From the NCBI RefSeq assembly GCF_001194135.2, contig NC_068997.1:2026127-2090126 (forward strand): a stretch of DNA of 64,000 bases, written 5' to 3'. The notes below the pieces were generated by a model. It ran no database searches. It was not told the DNA's origin and was given only the letters and a program-made list of their open reading frames with translations. Shown here piece by piece: positions 30,437 through 59,869 of this stretch. This DNA is from Octopus bimaculoides (taxonomy: Eukaryota). How positions within the stretch are numbered: position 1 is the stretch's first letter; every line of letters begins with the position of its first letter. A program made the position numbers and the translations under genes.

Positions 30437-31695
30437 CGGAGTGGGACAGAGAGGACGGACGTTTTTGAAATGACTATTACTCAGTCCCAGGGGAAGGGAC
30501 ATATGTCCGACAGGTACCATGCGGTCCGTAGTGTCTTAGAATTTTCCTTTTATTTTCAGTTGAAGTTACAGCGCTATGGACGATAGCGCATCGCATGTTT
30601 GCCTACAACAGTTACATGAAGAATAAACAATTCTTTCACAACAGCTCAATGTGAGTTTCGGCGCCACTTCAACATTCACCGAAATCAGAATGTTTCCACC
30701 CTTAACACAATTTTACATTGGGTGAATTCACTTCGTACACGAGGTACACTAATGAATAGGAGATTGGTGGGGTGCCACGAACAGTATGGACCCCTCAAAA
30801 TGTGGAACGCGTTAGACAAACTTTGATACGGAATCAGAATCGCTCTGCTCGAAGGTATTCCACTAAACTTGGCATCGGTAATCGATCGGTAAGGTGTATT
30901 TTGCATGAATACCTGCATTTTCACCAGTACAAATTGGTCATTGGGCAACAGTTGAAACCATGGGACTATGCACAGCGGCTTAACTTAGCACGTCAGATGG
31001 GAACAAATTTTGAGGCAAATGACAGCCTCATTTTGTTAATGAGTGATGAAGTTCATTTTCATCTTAATGACATGGTGAATCAACAGAACTGTTGTTATTG
31101 GGCTCCTGAAAATCTGAGAGAACTGCACGAAAGACCACTGCACTATCCAACAGTGACGGTCTGGTGTGCTGTTAGAAAAGCTACCATCATTGCTCCTTAC
31201 TTTTTTGAAGACAATAATGGAAATGCTGTTACTCTGAACTATGAGCGTTACATTGACACGATAAACAACTTCTTTGTGCCTAGATTACGACGAAAACGTA
31301 TGCCTATTCGACGTGTGTGGCTTCAGCAGGATGGGGCGACGGCCCACACAGCCAGAACATCAATGGACGTTCTTCGCTCTCTCTTCGGTGACCGACTTAT
31401 TTCCAGGTTTGCTGACATAAGCCCCGCACATTGGGCGATTTGAAGGAAGCTATACGTGTGGAAGTCCCCCAAATCGACGGAGCAATACTGGAGAGAGAGG
31501 AGGCCAACTTTCAAGAACACTTTCAGGAATATATCAATGAAAATGGACGTCATATGATGGATGTTGTTTTCCGCACTTGATTTTAACAAAAGCTAATCCA
31601 ATACAAACACATTGATATCAGTAAAATTTGTTTACAGCTAAAATTAATGATTTTGTGAATTTTTCAAAAACGTCCGTCCTCTCTGCCTAACCCTG
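30437..31695 (+). mobile_element. Tc1/mariner DNA transposon, DD41D (rosa-like) type, both TIRs and TA TSD present
   Basis: Left TIR cggagtgggacagagaggacggacgtttttgaaa; right TIR (reverse complement) cagggttaggcagagaggacggacgtttttgaaa, 24 bp identical; TA at 30435-30436 and 31696-31697. Confidence 0.92.
30568..31580 (+). pseudogene. Transposase of the DD41D element (frameshifted, internally deleted)
   Basis: N-terminal HTH (AQCEFRRHFNIHRN...ILHWV), LMSDEVHFHL (D1), WLQQDGATAHTA (D2), then KPRTLGDLKEAIR...ENGRHMMDVVFRT* in another frame; the WPPRSPDL..D motif is absent. Confidence 0.9.
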
Positions 31696-32929: not shown

Positions 32930-33075
32930 GCTGATTAAATGCATTCCAGTTCTTCACTGTTGTTATATTTTATCGATCACAGAATTAATAAACGGCAAAC
33001 TGGACCCAGCGGGATTTGAACTCCGAGCACAAAGTACAGTCCCTAAATACCACTCTGACAAATCTGCCACCTCAC
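32930..33075 (-). mobile_element. SINE family B, diverged fragment
   Basis: ttttatcgatcacaga...ggcaaactggacccagcgggatttgaactc. Confidence 0.6.
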
Positions 33076-33310
33076 TGATGTGAGGCTGTTTAGATATATT
33101 AATTACTTTACATAATTATATTAGCTTAAAATGCTTTTAAAACTAATACAATGGGATTACACTGGGGATTAGTAACATGTACAGATTCTCATTGGAATTG
33201 GTCAACAATATCCAATCAATTAGATATTAATCACATTTATATGTATACACATATATGGATGTAAATGCATACCTGCATACATACACATATATGTATTGTA
33301 TACCTATCTA

Positions 33311-33381
<71 letters not shown>

Positions 33382-34169
33382 NNNNNNNNNNNNNNNNNNN
33401 NNNNNNNNNNNNNNNNNNNNNNNNNNNNNNNNNNNNNNNNNNNNNNNNNNNNNNNNNNNNNNNNNNNNNNNNNNNNNNNNNNNNNNNNNNNNNNNNNNNN
33501 NNNNNNNNNNNNNNNNNNNNNNNNNNNNNNNNNNNNNNNNNNNNNNNNNNNNNNNNNNNNNNNNNNNNNNNNNNNNNNNNNNNNNNNNNNNNNNNNNNNN
33601 NNNNNNNNNNNNNNNNNNNNNNNNNNNNNNNNNNNNNNNNNNNNNNNNNNNNNNNNNNNNNNNNNNNNNNNNNNNNNNNNNNNNNNNNNNNNNNNNNNNN
33701 NNNNNNNNNNNNNNNNNNNNNNNNNNNNNNNNNNNNNNNNNNNNNNNNNNNNNNNNNNNNNNNNNNNNNNNNNNNNNNNNNNNNNNNNNNNNNNNNNNNN
33801 NNNNNNNNNNNNNNNNNNNNNNNNNNNNNNNNNNNNNNNNNNNNNNNNNNNNNNNNNNNNNNNNNNNNNNNNNNNNNNNNNNNNNNNNNNNNNNNNNNNN
33901 NNNNNNNNNNNNNNNNNNNNNNNNNNNNNNNNNNNNNNNNNNNNNNNNNNNNNNNNNNNNNNNNNNNNNNNNNNNNNNNNNNNNNNNNNNNNNNNNNNNN
34001 NNNNNNNNNNNNNNNNNNNNNNNNNNNNNNNNNNNNNNNNNNNNNNNNNNNNNNNNNNNNNNNNNNNNNNNNNNNNNNNNNNNNNNNNNNNNNNNNNNNN
34101 NNNNNNNNNNNNNNNNNNNNNNNNNNNNNNNNATATATGTAAAGAGAGAGAGAGAGAGATTGACAGATG

Positions 34170-34260
<91 letters not shown>

Positions 34261-34261
34261 C

Positions 34262-35700
34262 AGAAATAAAATGTTTGTGGGTATGCTGAATCCGAATGGA
34301 GGAAGATGTCTTTCTTCGCCTCTTTCTTGAAGAAGCAAATTGTGGTATGTCCCGATGTGAAAGATATGTTGAAGTCTAAGGGGCTTAGCGAGCCATTTGC
34401 GGCTGTGTGTTCAATGTCGAATTGGATGTTGTGGTGAAGGGCGTTAAAGACATTATGGTCCTTGATTACCTAATCCCTGAATTTGGTTGAGACGATGGCA
34501 TCATCGACATATCTCCGGTATAGGGTGATGTGTTGTCCTGCAGTTTGTCCAGAGTAAGGGGTGGTCAGGATCGTATCAGGACATTTACCCTCCTAGGACA
34601 ATTGCCCTCCATAGGACAATTCCTCCAGACGACAACTAGCCCCTAGGACAATTACCACAATACATTAAGAAGTTTTTAATCATCATCTGTTGTCCTCAGG
34701 GGTAATTGTCCTTGGGAGGTTATTGTCCATGGGGTAAATGTCCTAGACTTGGCCAGGATACCACTGAGTCTGTATCCCATTAGTGGGGCCACTGTATTGT
34801 CGGTAAGTAGTGTTTTTGTACGGAAGCATGTGTTGACAGTGCAGAAATCCAGGAGGGATTTGAGGCCTGTTTGTGGGAAGTCTGTGGCCAGCTTGTGGCC
34901 TCGATCTAGNNNNNNNNNNCAGTGCAGAAATCCAGGAGGGATTTGAGGCCTGTTTGTGGGAAGTCTGTGGCCAGCTTGTGGCCTCGATCTAGTCGCGCTT
35001 GGGTTGTAAGTATGGCCTCAGCCGGTGGTATACTGGTGTACATAGACCGTACATTTAGGCTGAAGAAATCGATGCTGTCCGAGACGGTTCTTTAGGTGTG
35101 CTAGTATGTGTGCCAAAATTGGTTTGAGGAGCTATGCCCCAAGCCACTCCATCTTGCAGAGTGGGGATTTTGTGCTGGCGACGATCCAGTGTACTTTGAG
35201 TTGCCTCAGTTCGTTGCTTTCCTTGTGCATTTTTATTAGGTAGTAGAACGGTTGTGTGGAGGAGGTGTGTGCTGGGAAGTTTCTGTATGTGTGCCTGTTG
35301 AGATCCATGCTTCCGGATATGTTCTTTCATAGGTCGTTGCATTGTTTTTCTATCCTGTTCGTAATTTTTCTTGTAGTTGTGTGCTCGCACGGGGTGCAGA
35401 TATCGCCCTGGGAAAGGTGAGACATAACACCCGCGTCGCGCGAGTCCGTGTCGATCACACATAGTCCTCCCCCTTTGTCCGAGAATAGGAACATGTAGTT
35501 TTTCTCCTTTAGGGAGTCGAGTATGGAAAACTCTTTGGATGCCATGTTTGTGTGTGGTAATCGTCTCTAAGCAGACTCCAAGGCTTTCAGGCGGACGTGA
35601 CATAGCCTACTGACCCTGTTCTCGAAGTGATGGTGGTTTGCTGCACTCTCCTTCGTACGGGTACGGTCTGATAGCTTCGTCCGTCACTGCGTTGGTCTTC
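34262..35700 (-). mobile_element. Penelope-like element (PLE), reverse transcriptase region, pseudogenised
   Basis: Minus-strand motifs in order: FSDKGGGLCVIDT (~35475), FYYLIKMHK, LLKPIL, SLNVRSMYTSIP (~35050), LLDFCTVNTCF, MG..LSGILATL, LYRRYVDD (~34510), FNALHHNIQF, DIFLHSDS; characteristic PLE RT motif order. No GIY-YIG domain seen. Confidence 0.85.
34572..34749. mobile_element. 178-bp fold-back MITE nested in the PLE RT
   Basis: Inverted ends aggacatttaccc/gggtaaatgtcct, internal ggacaatt/aattgtcc subrepeats, flanked by tggtcaggat (34562-34571) and tggccaggat (34750-34759). Confidence 0.85.
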
Positions 35701-35711
35701 GCTGAGCTTCT

Positions 35712-35912
35712 GTGCCCATTAGTGGGGCCACTGTATTGTCGGTAAGTAGTGTTTTTGTACGGAAGCATGTGTTGACAGTGCAGAAATCCAGGAGGGATTT
35801 GAGGCCTGTTGGTGGGAAGTCTGTGGCCAGCTTGTGGCCTCGATCTAGTCGCGCTTGGGTTGTAAGTATGGCCTCAGCCGGTGGTATACTGGTGTACATA
35901 GACCGTACAGAG
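35712..35912 (-). mobile_element. Second, near-identical partial copy of the PLE RT middle segment
   Basis: Nearly identical to 34776-35055 (VRSMYTSIPPAEAIL...APLMG), with a few substitutions (e.g. ttggtggga vs tttgtggga). Confidence 0.85.
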
Positions 35913-36009
35913 GTGGTGATGGTGTGTTCTGGGAGTTTCCGGGTGGTAGCATACTTGGGGTCTCTGCTCAGTATCCCCTTTTCCTCCATTCTCAAATTTT
36001 CAAAGTTCA

Positions 36010-36062
36010 AAAGTTCAGAAGTTTCAAAAGTTTAGAAAGTTTAGAAAGTTTAGAAAGTTTAA
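36010..36062 (+). repeat. 9-bp tandem repeat (tagaaagtt)n
   Basis: Directly visible, running into an N-gap region. Confidence 0.8.
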
Positions 36063-39704: not shown

Positions 39705-40011
39705 NNNNNNNNNNNNNNNNNNNNNNNNNNNNNNNNNNNNNNNNNNNNNNNNNNNNNNNNNNNNNNNNNNNNNNNNNNNNNNNNNNNNNNNNNNNNNNNN
39801 NNNNNNNNNNNNNNNNNNNNNNNNNNNNNNNNNNNNNNNNNNNNNNNNNNNNNNNNNNNNNNNNNNNNNNNNNNNNNNNNNNNNNNNNNNNNNNNNNNNN
39901 NNNNNNNNNNNNNNNNNNNNNNNNNNNNNNNNNNNNNNNNNNNNNNNNNNNNNNNNNNNNNNNNNNNNNNNNNNNNNNNNNNNNNNNNNNNNNNNNNNNN
40001 NNNNNNNNNNN

Positions 40012-40066
<55 letters not shown>

Positions 40067-40191
40067 TTCTCTCTCTCTCTCCATTATATATATATATATA
40101 TAATTATATAATTACATATAGCTGTATAAACATACACTCACGCACTCACACACTCACGCACGCACACAGACACACTCTCACACACACACAC

Positions 40192-40322
40192 ATACGCTAA
40201 CGTTCTTTGCCGCTACAACATGGCTGTTCTGTAAAGAACTGTGTTACTACAATTTAATCCCAGGAAAATATCTTTTACCGACACACAACCTGTGTCCCAT
40301 ATATTATGAGTAAGACCAGGTA
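40192..40322 (-). repeat. Inverted partial copy of the 350-bp hammerhead-containing unit
   Basis: Reverse complement ctacctggtcttac...ggacacaggttgt...ggtaaaagatattttcc...tgtagtaacacagttcttt...aacagccat aligns to 40367-40530 with an internal deletion. Confidence 0.85.
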
Positions 40323-40327
40323 GGTGT

Positions 40328-40372
40328 CCAGTACCGATGAAGAGTAAAGACCTAGAAACTATGGTCTACTCG
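40328..40372 (+). ncRNA. Type I hammerhead ribozyme-like motif, copy 1 (degenerate)
   Basis: CCAGTA-CCGATGA-AGAGTAAAGACCTA-GAAA-CTATG-GTC-TACTCG; mismatches in stems I, II and III. Confidence 0.55.
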
Positions 40373-40677
40373 TCTTACCAAGCTGGAGGGGAATGATTCG
40401 CTCCCTTACTCACAAAGCATTGGACACAGGTTGTATAGCATTAACCAGTTGGAAAAGACGTTTCCTTATGTTAAAATGTAGTAACACAGTTCTTTATAAA
40501 ACAGCCATCTTATAGTTACAAGAAGCGTTACCGTATAGTATTGTTACTACTTATACCGCGTTTAGAGATTTTAGAACTAGCTATTTTGATCGTTACGAGA
40601 CCAGCTGCTGTCTGCTGCTCCTTTGTTTATATATTCTGAGCAGGGAGGATTCACTACCATCTCTAGCAGGCAGATGT

Positions 40678-40722
40678 CCAGTACCGATGAAGGGTAAAGA
40701 CCCAGAAACCATGGTCTACTGG
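40678..40722 (+). ncRNA. Type I (minimal) hammerhead ribozyme-like motif, copy 2
   Basis: Stem I CCAGTA/TACTGG (6 bp perfect), core CCGATGA (U4C variant), stem II GGGT-AAAG-ACCC, GAAA, palindromic stem III ACCATGGT, predicted GUC cleavage after 40716. Confidence 0.75.
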
Positions 40723-41760
40723 TCTTGTCAATCTGGAGTGGAGTGATTCGCTCCTATAATGACAATATATCGGACACAAGCTGTGGGTCGTTAAGCAGCT
40801 GGAAAAGATGTTTTGCTGAGGTTAAAATGTAGTGACACAGTTGTTTATAGAACTACGTTATTGTGGTAAAGAATCGTTGCCGTCTAGTATTGTGACCATT
40901 TATATCTCGTTTAGAGATTTTAGAACTTGCTATATATATATATACTTATCCACATACATGTATATGGATATATATGTTTCCCCCACCTCTCTCTNNNNNN
41001 NNNNNNNNNNNNNNNNNNNNNNNNNNNNNNNNNNNNNNNNNNNNNNNNNNNNNNNNNNNNNNNNNNNNNNNNNNNNNNNNNNNNNNNNNNNNNNNNNNNN
41101 NNNNNNNNNNNNNNNNNNNNNNNNNNNNNNNNNNNNNNNNNNNNNNTATATATGTACATATGTCTATGTCTAAATATATATATGGATCAAAACAGCTTGA
41201 TTCAAATTCGTTGGTACTCTTGAGTTTCAAGCGTGATGATAGTTGTCAGCCATTTTGAATTTGAATGCGCGCGCGTGTGTATATGTGTGTGTGTGTGTAT
41301 GAGAGAGAGTGTGTGTATGTGTATACATAAGCAAAGTTGTATGATTCACAACCCATTCTTTGATTTTATATACCCATATCAAATTATGTAGACTAACTGC
41401 CAAGATAGACTAACTGCCAAGATAGACTAACTNNNNNNNNNNAGTTCCAATTAGCTGCAGTGATGAACTAAATTGTTATAAGAGTATTTCTCGTATTTCC
41501 CTATATATCTATATATGTACATATGTCTATGTCTATATATATATATGGATCAAAACAGCTTGATTCAAATTCGTTGGTACTCTTGAGTTTCAAGCGTGAT
41601 GATAGTTGTCAGCCATTTTGAATTTGAATGCGCGCGCGTGTGTATATGTGTGTGTGTGTGTATGAGAGAGAGNNNNNNNNNNNNNNNATGTGTATACATA
41701 AGCAAAGTTGTATGATTCACAACCCATTCTTTGATTTTATATACCCATATCAAATTATGT

Positions 41761-41838
41761 AGACTAACTGCCAAGATAGACTAACTGCCAAGATAGACTA
41801 ACTGCCAAGATAGACTAACTGCCAAGATAGACTAACTG
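41761..41838 (+). repeat. 17-bp minisatellite (agactaactgccaagat)n, about 4.5 copies
   Basis: Directly visible; a partial copy also lies at about 41391-41432 next to a gap. Confidence 0.9.
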
Positions 41839-43058
41839 ACAATCCAACAAACTGAATTTGGTTCTTCATCACACACAGAGACACAATCAGCCAAAAACAT
41901 TGACTGATCAGGGAACTAGCGTTCTGCAAATCTGAGTTAACCTCTTCTCCCACGTAATTACTTACATCATGTAAATATTGCGTGTTATCAGGAATTCTCG
42001 AAAATTACCAGTAGCCATTTTTTGTTTTATCATAGTTTGGTGCTAAGTATGAGATCAAGGTTCATGCCAGAAGTTTTGAGATTATTTTAAGAGTGAGATT
42101 AACTTCAAAGACTGCATTCTACAAACTAGTCAGCTGTGACATGCAGAATTTAGTAGGGTGTGCTCAAAGTGTTGTAACAGCCCTCTCCTTCAGTCTTGAA
42201 TAATAAGAAAAAATATTTGCAGGTCATCTTATTAGATGCATAGTGATGATATACTAAAATTACAATAATCTTGGACAGTTATAACCGACTCGCATAAAAA
42301 AAAATGTCTAAATCCTTCTGGAATACACCTCATAGATTTGAACATCCTACATGTCAAGTTACTCCTGCCTAACTCCAAAATTTGAATGCTGGTGAGGCTC
42401 CCGAAATGAACTTAGGATGGAATACTAGGTAGTCAATTCAGTAAGTGGGGCCTCACATCATTGAACGGAGCTGGTGTGTCGTAAAGCCGTCCAGAAGAAT
42501 GCACCGAAATAGTGCGCATTTACTTCCGATTCCCCTTGAAAACCTCTGACGAGCCGTATGCGGAGCGCTTAATCAATTGCACGTGCACAAGCAAAACACT
42601 TTCAAAGTCTCGTCCTGACGTGAACGTTGAGTCGCTAAAAATATCCCCATTAATGTAGGATACAAAACAGCACCTTGTGTGTGTGCGCGCGCGCGCGCGC
42701 GTTTGTGAGAGAGAGAGCGCATATGTTGCTGTTTAAATTATTTGAATTCATCTCACAAGGGATCTGAGTTCTAACAAAATTATAAAGCTTCGTCTCTGGA
42801 GTTAGGATGATAAAAACAGAGTTATGTGCTGAACTTAAGAAAATCCAGTATATTTATACCGTTGTACTTACAGCTTTTTGAGATTGTCGTTTGAGCATTT
42901 ACTAACATAGCCAACGGTGCCGAGGACTAACAATATGAACGTGAATTTAGTTCAGGGAGACGAGCTGCAAGTTTCCAGGCTGTACTCCGTAAATAGTTTT
43001 CTTCATGCTGACTCTGGAAGACATATCCACATCTGCACACCACTTAAACTCTAGGTGT

Positions 43059-43518: not shown

Positions 43519-44497
43519 ATATGCATGTATGTAAGTGTATCTATGTGTCTACATGTGTCTGTGCATAAGCGAATAGAGAAGTTTGCGGTCCGGTAGGGTG
43601 TTTGGGGCTGTGGTTGTTTCTATGTAAATATATATGTTTGCTTTTGTGGGTGTTTATATCCTAGTACAGCTATCAAGTCTTTAGCTGTTATCACCCGCTG
43701 TTAATTTCGTCATTTACTGATATGTTAATGAACCATATGACTATACTTTGATAGCTATTAAGACTATCGCTTAATATTTTTTGCTTAGTGATGTGCATTG
43801 CAGTTACTACTTGCTACAAGTACACAGTGAAGTGGGGAGAAATTTCATACATGCTTTGCCAATATAACATTTGGGGTGGTGACCTTAACAATTTTCACAA
43901 TTATCCAATGTGTCCTTTCCTAAGACAGCGGGGTTGTCATTTAGAAATGTGACTCAGTTGCTATTTCTAGAAGATTGAGTGATCAGGTCAGAGTTTCCTC
44001 ATCGGTTCATAAGTCTATAATCCACATACCTAGTATATAACGTAAATCCTTATCATGGTACCTATCATTTTGACAATAATTTCTCAGTTCAAATTCCACT
44101 GTTGTCAACTTCTTTTTCCACTATGTAAGGGGAAAGCAACTTTTACTAGTTAAGTACTAAATCTATTACATCGATTATATGCCGCCTCTATATGTTGAAG
44201 ATCCGATGCAGAAAAGAATTTCTATGTTCATACTTATTGTCACTCTTATTCAATATTGCACATTCATTTAATGATTTACCCATTACCCCTGCAGCAACGA
44301 AATTGACATCAAGGCTTCGCTGAGGAGATGAAACTAGAGTGAACTCTAACCGAAGCTTACTCCCGTACTTGTTGAAATAATGAAAGTACTGTTAGTTATT
44401 TAACTAACGTTTTCTTTTCCACAGTCACTGAGTATTTTAATTGGGTTGGTGGGGCATATTGGATTAAGTGTAAGCGTTATATGTGTGTGTATGCATA

Positions 44498-56267: not shown

Positions 56268-56597
56268 GTGCATCAGTCTCTTTATATGCATGTTGGATGG
56301 CGAACAAGGGTGTGGAGTGGAGTGAAAGCATTTGAAGAGGCCAGGATGATGCAAGCAGGGCTCAAGAGACATTTAAGGAAAAAGGTGAAGACTGAGAAGG
56401 TGAATGACAAGGACCTTTTTGTGTGCACAGTCTGTGACAGACCATGTCTGTCCTTGGCTGGCCTCAAATCTTACCTGCGAACCCATGGAAAACAAACCTC
56501 ACCCAGCTATTCTGATTATATGTCTGTGCACACGTTTGAATGTGGTGTGTGCCAGAGGGTTTGCAACTCCAATGGGGGTCTTAAAAGACATGTTAGG
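56268..56597 (+). mobile_element. RTE-type LINE 3' end carrying two C2H2 zinc fingers
   Basis: WRTRVWSGVKAFEEARMMQAGLKRHLRK (RTE post-RT motif), FVCTVCDRPCLSLAGLKSYLRTH, and FECGVCQRVCNSNGGLKRHVR (cut by a gap). Confidence 0.7.
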
Positions 56598-58977: not shown

Positions 58978-59869
58978 CAAGGTCTGCTCAATAAGTATCC
59001 GGACTGTTGCCATATTAACGAAGCTAAAGCTCGCAGGGTGAAGCCACTTGACAAAATTGGCCTTGAACTCGTCTGTGCATGCGCACTTAGTTTTAACGTT
59101 CTAGCTCACTTCCGCTCTTTACAGCAGAACTTCGTAGGAAGGTGTGTAACGTGTGATCGCCGCATTGTCCATGACAGAGAAAATTGTCATGGCGATACCT
59201 GCTCAGAGGCCTACACAATGTTTCAGAAAGTGTATGGAGAGGAGTGTACTAGTCACACTCAAGTGTACGAGTGTTTCAGATGTTTCCAAGATGGCCGAAA
59301 AAATGTCGATACTGACGAACGTTCTGGAAGACCCGCAACCAGCACAACTGAGAAAAACATCGCAGATGTGCATGTAGCTGTGAGGGGAAATTGTCGAATC
59401 ATCATTCGTAAGTTATAAAAGGATGTGCAGATTAGCTACGGTTCAGTTCAGTCCATTATCACTGAAGATTTTGGTATGAGATGCATGTCTGCCAAGTTTG
59501 TGCCAAAACTGTTTTCAGCTGACCAAGAAGACACTCGGGTTTCAGTTGCACAAGATCTCTTTGATTGTGTTGAGAACGATGAAAACTTTTTGAAACCTTT
59601 ACGTGGGCCTCTGAGCAGGTATCCCCAAACTTTTGGCGAAATCTGATGCCGATTCTCTGTTCGACTTTCTCTGTCATGCCCAATGCGACGATCACACGCT
59701 ACACGCCTTCCTTGCAAGCACTGCTGTAAACAGCAGAAGTGAGCTCGAACTTCAAAAAATAGTGCAAATGCACAGCAGAGTTCAAGGTCAATCTTCACCA
59801 ATCGGCTTCACCCTGCGTGATTTAGCTTCGTTACTATGAAACATCTCGATACTTATTGATCAGATCACG
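58978..59869 (+). mobile_element. Non-autonomous fold-back mariner element, copy 2
   Basis: Ends caaggtctgctcaataagtatccgg and gatacttattgatcagatcacg|TA; remnant GDTCSEAYTMFQKVYGEE...DERSGRP...MRCMSAKFVPKLF...ENDENFLK joined to an inverted 5' arm. Confidence 0.9.

What the first reader, a model, noticed from the sequence alone, without database searches (positions are those of the whole stretch)
40326..40930. Tandem 350-bp unit carrying a type I hammerhead ribozyme: candidate cephalopod non-LTR retrozyme
Seen: two diverged head-to-tail copies exactly 350 bp apart, with no coding capacity. Each starts with a hammerhead-shaped motif. Copy 2 (40678-40722) reads CCAGTA-CCGATGA-A-GGGT(AAAG)ACCC-A-GAAA-CCATG-GTC-TACTGG: a perfect 6-bp stem I, stem II, palindromic stem III (ACCATGGT) and a GUC triplet in the type I order. 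Established: minimal type I hammerheads with short palindromic stem III occur in Penelope-like elements and in 170-400-nt tandem non-LTR retrozymes of several metazoans, where cleavage at adjacent motifs releases a monomer that circularises. Inference: this is such an element and a transcript would yield a ~350-nt monomer or circRNA. I do not know of this family being described in cephalopods, but cannot confirm novelty. Caveats: the core has C instead of U at position 4, there is an extra A on each side of stem II, and copy 1 is decayed.
Basis: partly seen in the sequence, partly recalled or inferred. Interest (0 to 1): 0.85.

Follow-up and report, generated by a model that had tools for sequence, protein, structure and literature searches.

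The report
Old hammerhead-ribozyme tandem retroelement relic
This is most likely the decayed remnant of a small non-coding mobile element of a known kind, a 350-bp tandem unit with a self-cleaving hammerhead RNA motif copied by Penelope-like retrotransposons; only one of its two ribozyme motifs is still well formed.

Summary
Two head-to-tail copies lie 350 bp apart (40317-40666 and 40667-40933, 80% identical), and each carries a type I hammerhead-shaped motif at the same phase. A covariance model built only from four experimentally cleaving retrozyme hammerheads ranks 40678-40722 first in the whole window (22.3 bits, E about 4e-4; next hit 12.8 bits). Random sequence gives under 0.005 such motifs per window. 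Copy 1 is decayed (6.8 bits). The layout is the published signature of Penelope-like-element insertions: an inverted truncated copy, a partial tandem, and microsatellite flanks. A degraded RT of the RT + C-terminal GIY-YIG type lies 4 kb away. The "extra A" pair reads as an A.A mismatch at 10.1-11.1, like the U.U in an active axolotl retrozyme. U4C is a known low-activity natural variant. Against: Rfam finds no hammerhead, there are only 1.76 direct units, the copies are old (K2P 0.23-0.34), the monomer fold is not unusually stable, and no other family copy could be found. Family consensus, covariation, activity and the cephalopod origin therefore remain untested. Verdict: probably a fossil retrozyme-like or pLTR-derived element, a new member of a known kind, of modest interest.

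The parts
40012..40191 (.). Left flank: (TC)n, (TA)n and CA-rich microsatellites directly after an assembly gap. This is the likely target region.
   Evidence: Microsatellites are common in this window: 26% of positions lie within 60 bp of one. The flank is therefore only weak support for a target-site bias.
40192..40314 (-). Inverted, 5'-truncated partial copy of the unit (unit columns 88-221, with a 10-bp deletion). It joins direct copy 1 head-to-head and lacks the hammerhead part.
   Evidence: the repeat finder I1-I3. blastn gives 72-74% identity. Three-way alignment A2. Distances.
40317..40666 (+). Direct copy 1 of the 350-bp non-coding unit.
40328..40372 (+). Hammerhead motif of copy 1, decayed. 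Helix II has a G.U plus an A.C mismatch. Helix I has a C.C mismatch. Loop 3 is UAUG. The cleavage site would be after C40366.
   Evidence: Model R1 scores it only 6.8 bits, with helix II unaligned. The energy of the hammerhead fold is +2.6 kcal/mol.
40367..40716 (+). Predicted 350-nt monomer between the two C17 sites.
   Evidence: Inference from the motif positions. The fold is -83 kcal/mol with z = -0.7, so it is not unusually structured.
40667..40933 (+). Direct copy 2, 267 bp. It ends at unit column about 265, against a (TA)n tract.
40678..40722 (+). Hammerhead motif of copy 2, with all helices intact.
- Helix I: 40678-40683 / 40717-40722 (6 bp)
- Core: C3 C4 G5 A6 U7 G8 A9 at 40684-40690
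- Helix II: 40691-40704 (A.A, then GGGU/ACCC, loop AAAG)
- G12 A13 A14 A15.1: 40705-40708
- Helix III palindrome ACCAUGGU: 40708-40715
- C17 = 40716, predicted cleavage after it
   Evidence: Sequence. It is the only descriptor hit in the window. It is the top hit of model R1 at 22.3 bits, E 4e-4, full length. The homodimer minimum-energy structure is a double hammerhead, -32.2 kcal/mol.
40934..40994 (.). Right flank: (TA)n, an AT-rich palindrome and (CT)n, running into an assembly gap.
   Evidence: (I4, I6).

Best explanation
The locus is a fossil of one old insertion of a short, non-coding, hammerhead-bearing retroelement that depends on Penelope-like elements (PLEs). It is either a non-LTR 'retrozyme' or its close relative, a pLTR-derived element.

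Shown:
- The insertion consists of an inverted 5'-truncated copy, a full 350-bp unit and a 267-bp unit, head to tail, between microsatellites.
- Each direct unit carries a type I hammerhead with a 6-bp helix I, a 4-bp helix II closed by an A.A, and a 2-bp helix III with a palindromic CAUG loop.

Inferred mechanism for the live ancestor:
1. A multimeric transcript is made.
2. Neighbouring hammerheads pair through the 8-nt palindrome ACCAUGGU into a double hammerhead.
3. Each cuts after C17 (GUC|U) and releases a 350-nt RNA with 5'-OH and 2',3'-cyclic phosphate ends.
4. A tRNA ligase of the RtcB type circularises this RNA.
5. A PLE reverse transcriptase/GIY-YIG endonuclease copies the RNA back into microsatellite DNA. 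This produces the tandem-plus-inverted layout.

At this locus the element is probably dead. Copy 1's ribozyme is broken, and both copies carry C4 instead of U4.
For: - A covariance model built only from four retrozyme hammerheads shown to cleave (coral, mussel and two axolotl; sequences from the supplement of PMC7229834; alignment; model) ranks 40678-40722 first in the 64-kb window. It scores 22.3 bits, E about 4e-4, with a full-length match; the runner-up scores 12.8 bits.
- My descriptor finds only this site. Shuffles and 50 Mb of Markov sequence give 0.003 or fewer per window at this quality.
- The motif is at the same phase in both units, 350 bp apart.
- The unit is non-coding, has 41% GC and is 350 bp long. 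This matches the published ranges: 150-450 bp, GC below 45-50%, and 350-390 bp in mussel.
- Helix III is an 8-nt palindrome, like mussel ACGCGCGU and axolotl ACACGUGU. Its duplex energy is -11.2 kcal/mol, against -10.3 to -13.4 for the others. The RNAcofold minimum of two copy-2 motifs is exactly the double hammerhead, -32.2 versus 2 x -11.9 kcal/mol.
- An inverted 5'-truncated copy next to a partial tandem, and a microsatellite target, are described as typical of PLE insertions in PMC8557442. This is what searches show.
- The three copies are equidistant (73-76% identity), as expected from one composite insertion event.
- A degraded RT at about 34200-36010 (-) has 550 homologs (best E 2e-40). 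The top ones carry RVT_1 plus a C-terminal GIY-YIG domain, which is the canonical PLE architecture.
- The hammerhead is better conserved than the rest of the unit (91% versus 78%, hypergeometric P=0.03).
Against: - Rfam's hammerhead families give no match at gathering score, nor at E<=10 on the 801-bp island.
- The core has C4 in both copies. U4C is reported to lower activity considerably.
- The 10.1-11.1 position is A.A rather than G-C.
- There are only 1.76 direct units, and TRF does not call a repeat.
- Copy 1's hammerhead is broken.
- The 350-nt monomer is not more stable than shuffles (z -0.7 and -1.3), whereas retrozyme circles are described as highly self-paired.
- No second locus of the family was found in the window or in any collection I could scan. 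Consensus and covariation are therefore untested.
- At about 20 bits or at the relaxed descriptor, a genome of a few Gb is expected to hold tens to hundreds of chance motifs. The motif alone is therefore not decisive.
Confidence: 0.62

Rival explanations
1. It is the 3' end (pseudo-LTR region) of an autonomous Penelope-like element that inserted as two heavily 5'-truncated tandem copies plus an inverted truncated copy. In this case the hammerhead is a PLE hammerhead, and 350 bp is an accident of where truncation fell, not the length of a circular RNA.
For: - PLE insertions are described as highly 5'-truncated, in partial tandems, with an inverted truncated copy at the 5' end.
- PLE hammerheads typically have an extra base after A9 and a palindromic helix III. 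A real PLE contig shows CUGAAGA-A-GCC...GGC-GAAAC 57 nt upstream of its RT ORF.
- A canonical PLE RT remnant is 4 kb away.
- The stretch 40585-40666 is present only once. The downstream copy could therefore be a truncated longer element.
Against: - Helix I of 6 bp and helix II of 4 bp are the 'canonical' retrozyme dimensions. The published PLE minimal type has a 4-5 bp helix I and a 6-8 bp helix II.
- No RT/EN coding sequence adjoins the units.
- The unit shows no similarity to the PLE remnant or to anything else in the window.
Confidence: 0.2
2. It is a chance hammerhead look-alike inside an unrelated old tandem/inverted duplication or an unclassified repeat. No ribozyme ever existed here.
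For: - The core deviates from consensus at U4 and at 10.1-11.1.
- Rfam finds nothing.
- There are no other copies and no covariation data.
- The relaxed descriptor is expected to hit about 0.02 times per window at minimal thresholds.
- The monomer fold is unremarkable.
Against: - Random sequence gave no hit at the observed quality (helix I 6 bp, helix II 4 bp, 8-nt palindromic helix III) in 50 Mb.
- The independent model built from active ribozymes gives E about 4e-4, with a 9.5-bit gap to the noise.
- The motif coincides with a 350-bp non-coding tandem that has a PLE-type inverted copy.
- The minimum-energy dimer is the double hammerhead.
- The motif is the best-conserved part of the unit.
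Confidence: 0.15
3. It is a SINE-like, pol III-transcribed hammerhead element of the Schistosoma Sm-alpha kind, or a hairpin-RNA/miRNA-type locus formed by the inverted copy.
For: - Sm-alpha-type elements also carry type I hammerheads and occur in tandem.
- The inverted copy and copy 1 form 73-nt arms that are 78% complementary. Rfam gives a weak MIR2646-like match (20.9 bits).
Against: - No tRNA-like region was found.
- The MIR2646 match is far below its gathering score of 245 bits and only reflects the inverted repeat.
- The layout fits PLE insertions better.
Confidence: 0.03

Closest known systems
Axolotl non-LTR retrozyme Rtz_353 with HHR_Amex2 (Cervera & de la Pena 2020, PMC7229834)
   Same: - Tandem unit of about 350 bp.
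- Type I hammerhead with a 6-bp helix I.
- Helix II with a non-Watson-Crick pair at its base (U.U there, A.A here).
- Helix III of two pairs capped by a palindromic tetraloop, giving an 8-nt palindrome (ACACGUGU versus ACCAUGGU).
- Works much better as a dimer.
   Different: - No sequence similarity outside the motif.
- The axolotl core is CUGAUGA; here it is CCGAUGA.
- The axolotl has about 60,000 copies in long arrays and proven circRNAs. Here there is one decayed 1.76-unit locus and no expression data.
Mytilus galloprovincialis retrozyme Mg353 (same paper)
   Same: - Mollusc element with 350-390-bp AT-rich non-coding tandem repeats.
- Type I hammerhead with a 6-bp helix I, a 4-bp helix II and the ACGCGCGU palindromic helix III.
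- Lacks most of the loop-loop tertiary-contact nucleotides.
   Different: - Canonical CUGAUGA core and a G-C pair at 10.1-11.1.
- About 5000 copies.
- Cleavage measured at kobs about 0.1 per min, and abundant circRNA demonstrated.
- No primary sequence similarity to this unit.
Minimal hammerheads in the pseudo-LTRs of Penelope-like elements (Cervera & de la Pena 2014, PMC4209133; Craig et al. 2021, PMC8557442)
   Same: - Extra base after A9.
- Palindromic 15.2-16.2/loop 3, predicted to act as dimers.
- Insertions in the form of partial tandems with an inverted 5'-truncated copy, with a microsatellite bias.
- An example was seen in a real PLE contig.
   Different: - PLE minimal hammerheads usually have a shorter helix I (2-5 bp) and a longer helix II (6-8 bp).
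- They lie next to an RT-EN ORF. Here helices are 6 and 4 bp, and no ORF belongs to the unit.
Newt satellite 2 and Schistosoma Sm-alpha hammerhead repeats
   Same: Type I hammerheads in short tandem genomic repeats whose transcripts self-cleave to monomers.
   Different: - Those motifs are recognised by Rfam Hammerhead_1; this one is not.
- Sm-alpha is SINE-like with a pol III promoter, for which there is no sign here.

Membership tests
Hammerhead ribozyme, type I | Conserved core nucleotides C3, G5, A6, G8, A9, G12, A13, A14, the A15.1-U16.1 pair and H17, in the order helix I / CUGANGA / helix II / GAAA / helix III / UH / helix I | tested here: met
   All are present in both copies, in type I order.
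Hammerhead ribozyme, type I | U at position 4 | tested here: not met
   Both copies have C4 (CCGAUGA). U4C is a reported natural viroid variant with considerably reduced activity in vitro (PMC3088659). C4-G5 is a CpG kept in both copies, so by inference it was already in the inserted ancestor.
Hammerhead ribozyme, type I | G10.1-C11.1 pair directly flanked by A9 and G12 | tested here: not met
   An A lies on each side of GGGU/ACCC. Model R1 reads them as an A.A pair at 10.1-11.1. U.U at this position exists in active natural hammerheads.
Hammerhead ribozyme, type I | Three helices closing the core | tested here: met
   Copy 2 has helix I of 6 bp, helix II of 4 bp and helix III of 2 bp intramolecular or 8 bp as a dimer. 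Copy 1 has a broken helix II and a mismatch in helix I.
Hammerhead ribozyme, type I | Match to the curated Rfam hammerhead covariance models | tested here: not met
   There is no hit at gathering score in the window. No hammerhead family hits at E<=10 on 40195-40995.
Hammerhead ribozyme, type I | Compensatory changes in the helices across family members | not testable with these tools
   Only two copies exist here, and their four differences all damage copy 1. No other copy was found.
Hammerhead ribozyme, type I | Mg2+-dependent self-cleavage after position 17 | not testable with these tools
   This needs in vitro transcription.
Non-LTR retrozyme (Cervera & de la Pena 2020; Li et al. 2026 preprint) | Non-coding head-to-tail repeats of about 150-450 bp with low GC | tested here: met
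   The period is 350 bp, GC is 41%, and there is no coding signal. However, there are only 1.76 units, and TRF does not call the repeat.
Non-LTR retrozyme (Cervera & de la Pena 2020; Li et al. 2026 preprint) | Complete type I hammerhead in at least two consecutive units (the preprint's criterion for an 'active' element) | tested here: not met
   Copy 2 is complete and copy 1 is not.
Non-LTR retrozyme (Cervera & de la Pena 2020; Li et al. 2026 preprint) | Multi-copy family dispersed in the genome | tested here: inconclusive
   There is no other copy in the 64-kb window. The source genome is not in any searchable collection.
Non-LTR retrozyme (Cervera & de la Pena 2020; Li et al. 2026 preprint) | Highly self-paired monomer RNA | tested here: inconclusive
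   The minimum free energy is -83 kcal/mol, but z is only -0.7 on the plus strand. The copy is about 12-17% decayed, which would blur any signal.
Non-LTR retrozyme (Cervera & de la Pena 2020; Li et al. 2026 preprint) | Co-occurrence with autonomous Penelope-like elements | tested here: met
   There is a degraded RT at about 34200-36010 (-). Its homologs carry RVT_1 plus a C-terminal GIY-YIG domain.
Non-LTR retrozyme (Cervera & de la Pena 2020; Li et al. 2026 preprint) | Expression as linear and circular monomer RNA | not testable with these tools
   No transcript data are available.
Penelope-like element insertion / pLTR | Partial tandem with an adjacent inverted 5'-truncated copy; microsatellite target | tested here: met
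   The layout is shown, and the published description. The microsatellite flanks are weak evidence, because 26% of positions in this window lie near one.
Penelope-like element insertion / pLTR | RT plus GIY-YIG ORF within the element | tested here: not met
   No ORF or RT similarity is found in 40192-40933. The nearby RT remnant shares no sequence with the unit.

The most novel reading that the evidence does not exclude
The unit belongs to a still-active retrozyme family of this animal, possibly a cephalopod. Its consensus hammerhead would really use C4 and an A.A pair at 10.1-11.1, would cleave efficiently as a dimer, and would give abundant 350-nt circular RNAs. That would be a natural, fit hammerhead core variant and the first retrozyme circRNAs described in cephalopods.
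Probability: 0.1. Interest if true: 0.6.

Novelty: new member of a known kind. Interest (0 to 1): 0.33.

Why it matters
If the family is confirmed genome-wide, it would add one more animal lineage to the known range of hammerhead-bearing, PLE-dependent small retroelements. No paper in the searched library links hammerheads or retrozymes with cephalopods, apart from a remark on hammerhead-less Naiad PLEs. It would also offer a natural test of how much a U4C / A.A(10.1-11.1) core can cleave when it is helped by dimerisation. Retrozymes are already documented in molluscs and many other invertebrate phyla, and this particular locus is a decayed relic. The gain is therefore incremental rather than conceptual.

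Tried and rejected
- **Rfam.** A search at gathering score on the window, and at E<=10 on the island, found no hammerhead or other ribozyme. It returned only spurious AT-rich or hairpin miRNA-like matches far below threshold.
- **Search for other family copies.** None of these gave a real match:
  - blastn of the unit against the window;
  - exact-pattern scans of metagenome contigs (two patterns), viral contigs (two patterns) and prokaryote genome contigs. These gave either nothing or 20-25-nt chance matches;
  - a six-frame pseudo-protein query, meant to catch spurious ORF calls on other copies;
  - exact look-ups of ORFs within the unit.
- **Identifying the organism.**
  - The exact ORF look-up failed.
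  - The mariner-like transposase has relatives only at 77% identity or less, on anonymous metagenome contigs that share no DNA with the window.
  - The taxon stays unverified.
- **First attempts on the RT remnant.** Pfam, PDB and the word-indexed protein search all gave nothing. Only the full HMMER scan resolved it.
- **tRNA/SINE origin.** Rejected; ARAGORN was negative.
- **Bacterial-type promoter and terminator scan.** Not informative for a eukaryote.
- **Second-best R1 hits.** The hits at 33069, 44314 and 42455 were inspected. They lack helix II or the core and are noise.
- **Homology to published retrozymes.** There is no primary-sequence similarity to the published coral, mussel or axolotl retrozymes outside the motif.
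Full report
**What is in the sequence.** The finding lies on a 983-bp island between two assembly gaps (39705-40011 and 40995-41146). The repeat finder reports a direct repeat, 40317-40463 versus 40667-40813, with start-to-start spacing of exactly 350 bp. Two further blocks are spaced 349 and 351 bp. MAFFT and blastn give 80% identity over 267 aligned bases.

Copy 1 is a full 350-bp unit (40317-40666). Copy 2 stops after 267 bp at 40933, where a (TA)n tract begins. There are thus 1.76 direct units, and Tandem Repeats Finder does not call a 350-bp period.

40192-40314 is an inverted copy of unit columns 88-221, joined head-to-head to copy 1. All three pairs of copies are about equally distant in the shared part: 73-76% identity, K2P 0.31-0.34. 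This fits a single, old, composite insertion.

Nothing else in the 64-kb window resembles the unit. The unit has no convincing reading frame: the longest is 76 open codons. A six-frame query found no protein relative.

**The hammerhead-shaped motif.** Copy 2 (40678-40722) reads as follows:

| Element | Sequence | Coordinates |
|---|---|---|
| Helix I | CCAGUA / UACUGG | 40678-40683 / 40717-40722 |
| Core | C3 C4 G5 A6 U7 G8 A9 | 40684-40690 |
| Helix II | A.A, then GGGU/ACCC, loop AAAG | 40691-40704 |
| G12 A13 A14 A15.1 | GAAA | 40705-40708 |
| C15.2, loop CAUG, G16.2, U16.1 | CCAUGGU | 40709-40715 |
| C17 | C | 40716 |

Copy 1 (40328-40372) differs at four positions, and each change damages a pair. 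Helix II gets a G.U and an A.C. The helix III palindrome gets a U.G. Helix I gets a C.C.

**Is it more than chance?**
- A descriptor I wrote finds this one site on both strands of the window. It allows C[CU]GANGA, 0-1 extra base on each side of helix II, GAAA, UH, and helix I of at least 4 bp.
- Dinucleotide shuffles of the window give 0.023 hits per window at the minimal thresholds. They give 0.003 with helix I >=6 and helix II >=4.
- In 50 Mb of Markov sequence there were 11 hits at minimal thresholds and 2 with helix I >=5 and helix II >=4. There were none at the observed quality and none with a palindromic helix III.
- As an independent test, I took the four retrozyme hammerheads whose self-cleavage was shown experimentally: coral Amil224, mussel Mg353, and axolotl Ax353 and Ax330. 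Their sequences come from Supplementary Table 2 of PMC7229834. I aligned them and built a covariance model with the textbook structure.
- With filters off, the best hit in the whole window is 40678-40722 on the plus strand. It scores 22.3 bits, E about 4e-4, with a full-length match. The next hits score 12.8 bits or less, and on inspection they lack helix II or the core.
- Copy 1 scores 6.8 bits.
- In a contig that encodes a real Penelope-like RT, the same model finds a minimal hammerhead 57 nt upstream of the ORF (CUGAAGA-A-GCC...GGC-GAAAC). This serves as a small positive control.
- The motif alone would not be significant genome-wide: tens to hundreds of chance hits are expected in a genome of a few Gb. 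Its position at the same phase of a 350-bp tandem repeat makes chance unlikely.

- *C4.* Perreault et al. 2011 record U4C as a natural viroid variant. It lowers activity considerably in vitro but supports infectivity. C4-G5 is a CpG present in both copies. By inference, C4 was therefore already in the inserted ancestor rather than being later decay.
- *The two extra A's.* The model pairs them as an A.A mismatch at 10.1-11.1. The active axolotl HHR_Amex2 has a U.U at this position, and Perreault et al. also report U10.1-U11.1. An unpaired base after A9 is a conserved trait of PLE hammerheads.
- *Still non-canonical.* Even so, this core departs from the consensus, and Rfam's hammerhead models do not see it even at E<=10.

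**Dimer behaviour.** Helix III, ACCAUGGU, is an 8-nt palindrome of the same design as mussel ACGCGCGU and axolotl ACACGUGU. Its duplex energy is -11.2 kcal/mol, against -10.3 to -13.4 for those. The RNAcofold minimum for two copy-2 motifs is exactly the classical double hammerhead: the cores are unpaired and helix III is 8 bp. Its energy is -32.2 kcal/mol, against 2 x -11.9 for two monomers. With the real pair (copy 1 plus copy 2) the double hammerhead is no longer the minimum. Copy 1's hammerhead fold has a positive energy of +2.6 kcal/mol.

**What kind of element is it?**
- Published non-LTR retrozymes are non-coding tandem units of 150-450 bp with GC below 45-50%. They carry type I hammerheads with a 6-bp helix I, a 4-bp helix II and a short palindromic helix III. 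The mussel family has 350-390-bp units. This unit fits: 350 bp, 41% GC.
- Craig et al. 2021 describe PLE insertions as strongly 5'-truncated partial tandems. They often have an inverted 5'-truncated copy at the 5' end and a bias for microsatellite targets. This matches the layout here.
- The microsatellite flanks weigh little, because 26% of positions in this window are within 60 bp of a microsatellite.
- On the minus strand at about 34200-36010 there is a frameshifted RT remnant. Pfam, PDB and the word-indexed protein search missed it. A full HMMER scan found 550 relatives, the best at E 2e-40. [quoted passage not shown]
- This remnant shares no DNA with the unit. It shows only that such elements live in this genome.

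**What argues against, or stays open.**
- The 350-nt monomer is not more stable than shuffles (z -0.7; minus strand -1.3).
- The hammerhead is only modestly better conserved than the rest of the unit (91% versus 78%, P=0.03).
- No other family member could be retrieved from any collection. None of them could be done.
- At this single locus I cannot separate a 350-bp retrozyme from two truncated 3' ends of a longer PLE. The 82 bp at 40585-40666 occur only once.

**Verdict.**
- Most likely (about 0.6): an old, inactive insertion of a retrozyme-like, PLE-mobilised, hammerhead-bearing unit.
- About 0.2: a truncated pLTR of an autonomous PLE, which would still be a real hammerhead.
- About 0.15: a chance look-alike.
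- The mechanism is inferred from the published family, not shown here. It comprises dimeric self-cleavage after C17, circularisation by an RtcB-type ligase, and reverse transcription by a PLE enzyme.
- This locus itself probably no longer releases a monomer.
- It is a new member of a known kind, of modest interest unless the family proves to be live with a C4 core.

Noticed in passing
window 34200-36010, minus strand: Frameshifted, stop-ridden reverse-transcriptase remnant with motifs SDKGGG, ..IV.S..SP and RYVDD. A full HMMER scan gives 550 relatives (best E 2e-40). The top relatives are 800-1160 aa and carry RVT_1 plus a C-terminal GIY-YIG domain, so this is a canonical EN+ Penelope-like element. 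Its 3' part is lost in the gap 33382-34132.
   Followed up: yes
window 34776-34909 and 35715-35848: A stretch of at least 134 nt is repeated at 99% identity on either side of a 10-N gap, inside the otherwise very degraded RT remnant. It looks like a scaffolding or assembly artefact rather than biology.
   Followed up: partly
window 30772-31443, plus strand: Nearly intact C-terminal two-thirds of a Tc1/mariner-type transposase. Its relatives are annotated DUF4817 or 'DD41D transposase'. The closest relatives are only 77% identical and sit on anonymous metagenome contigs.
   Followed up: partly
window 59038-59418 (+) and 59448-59801 (-): Two short ORFs in opposite orientation with similar N-termini. 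The first has a Mos1-type HTH_48 domain (E 2.5e-5), so they are probably mariner fragments.
   Followed up: no
window about 32990-33090, minus strand: The sequence GGAGTTCAAATCCCGCTGGG resembles a tRNA B box and T-arm, suggesting a tRNA-derived SINE. ARAGORN finds no tRNA.
   Followed up: partly
window 41389-41432 and 41760-41842: Two arrays of a 17-bp tandem repeat, TAGACTAACTGCCAAGA (98-100% matches), lie 330 bp apart just downstream of the finding.
   Followed up: no
window 56268-56597, plus strand: ORF with two C2H2 zinc fingers (zf-C2H2_4, E 6e-7). It runs into a microsatellite-coded low-complexity tail.
   Followed up: no
L016 261-295 (ENA metagenome contig encoding a 1040-aa PLE-type RT): Minimal hammerhead CUGAAGA-A-GCC GUUAA GGC-GAAAC-GUUUAC-GUU, 57 nt upstream of the RT ORF. 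It has the extra base after A9 that is typical of PLE hammerheads, and only about 2 bp of helix I.
   Followed up: partly
window 44314-44356, plus strand: GCUUCG-CUGAGGA...GAAAC...CCGAAGC scored 12.3 bits with the retrozyme hammerhead model. It has no helix II between the core boxes and is judged a chance match.
   Followed up: yes
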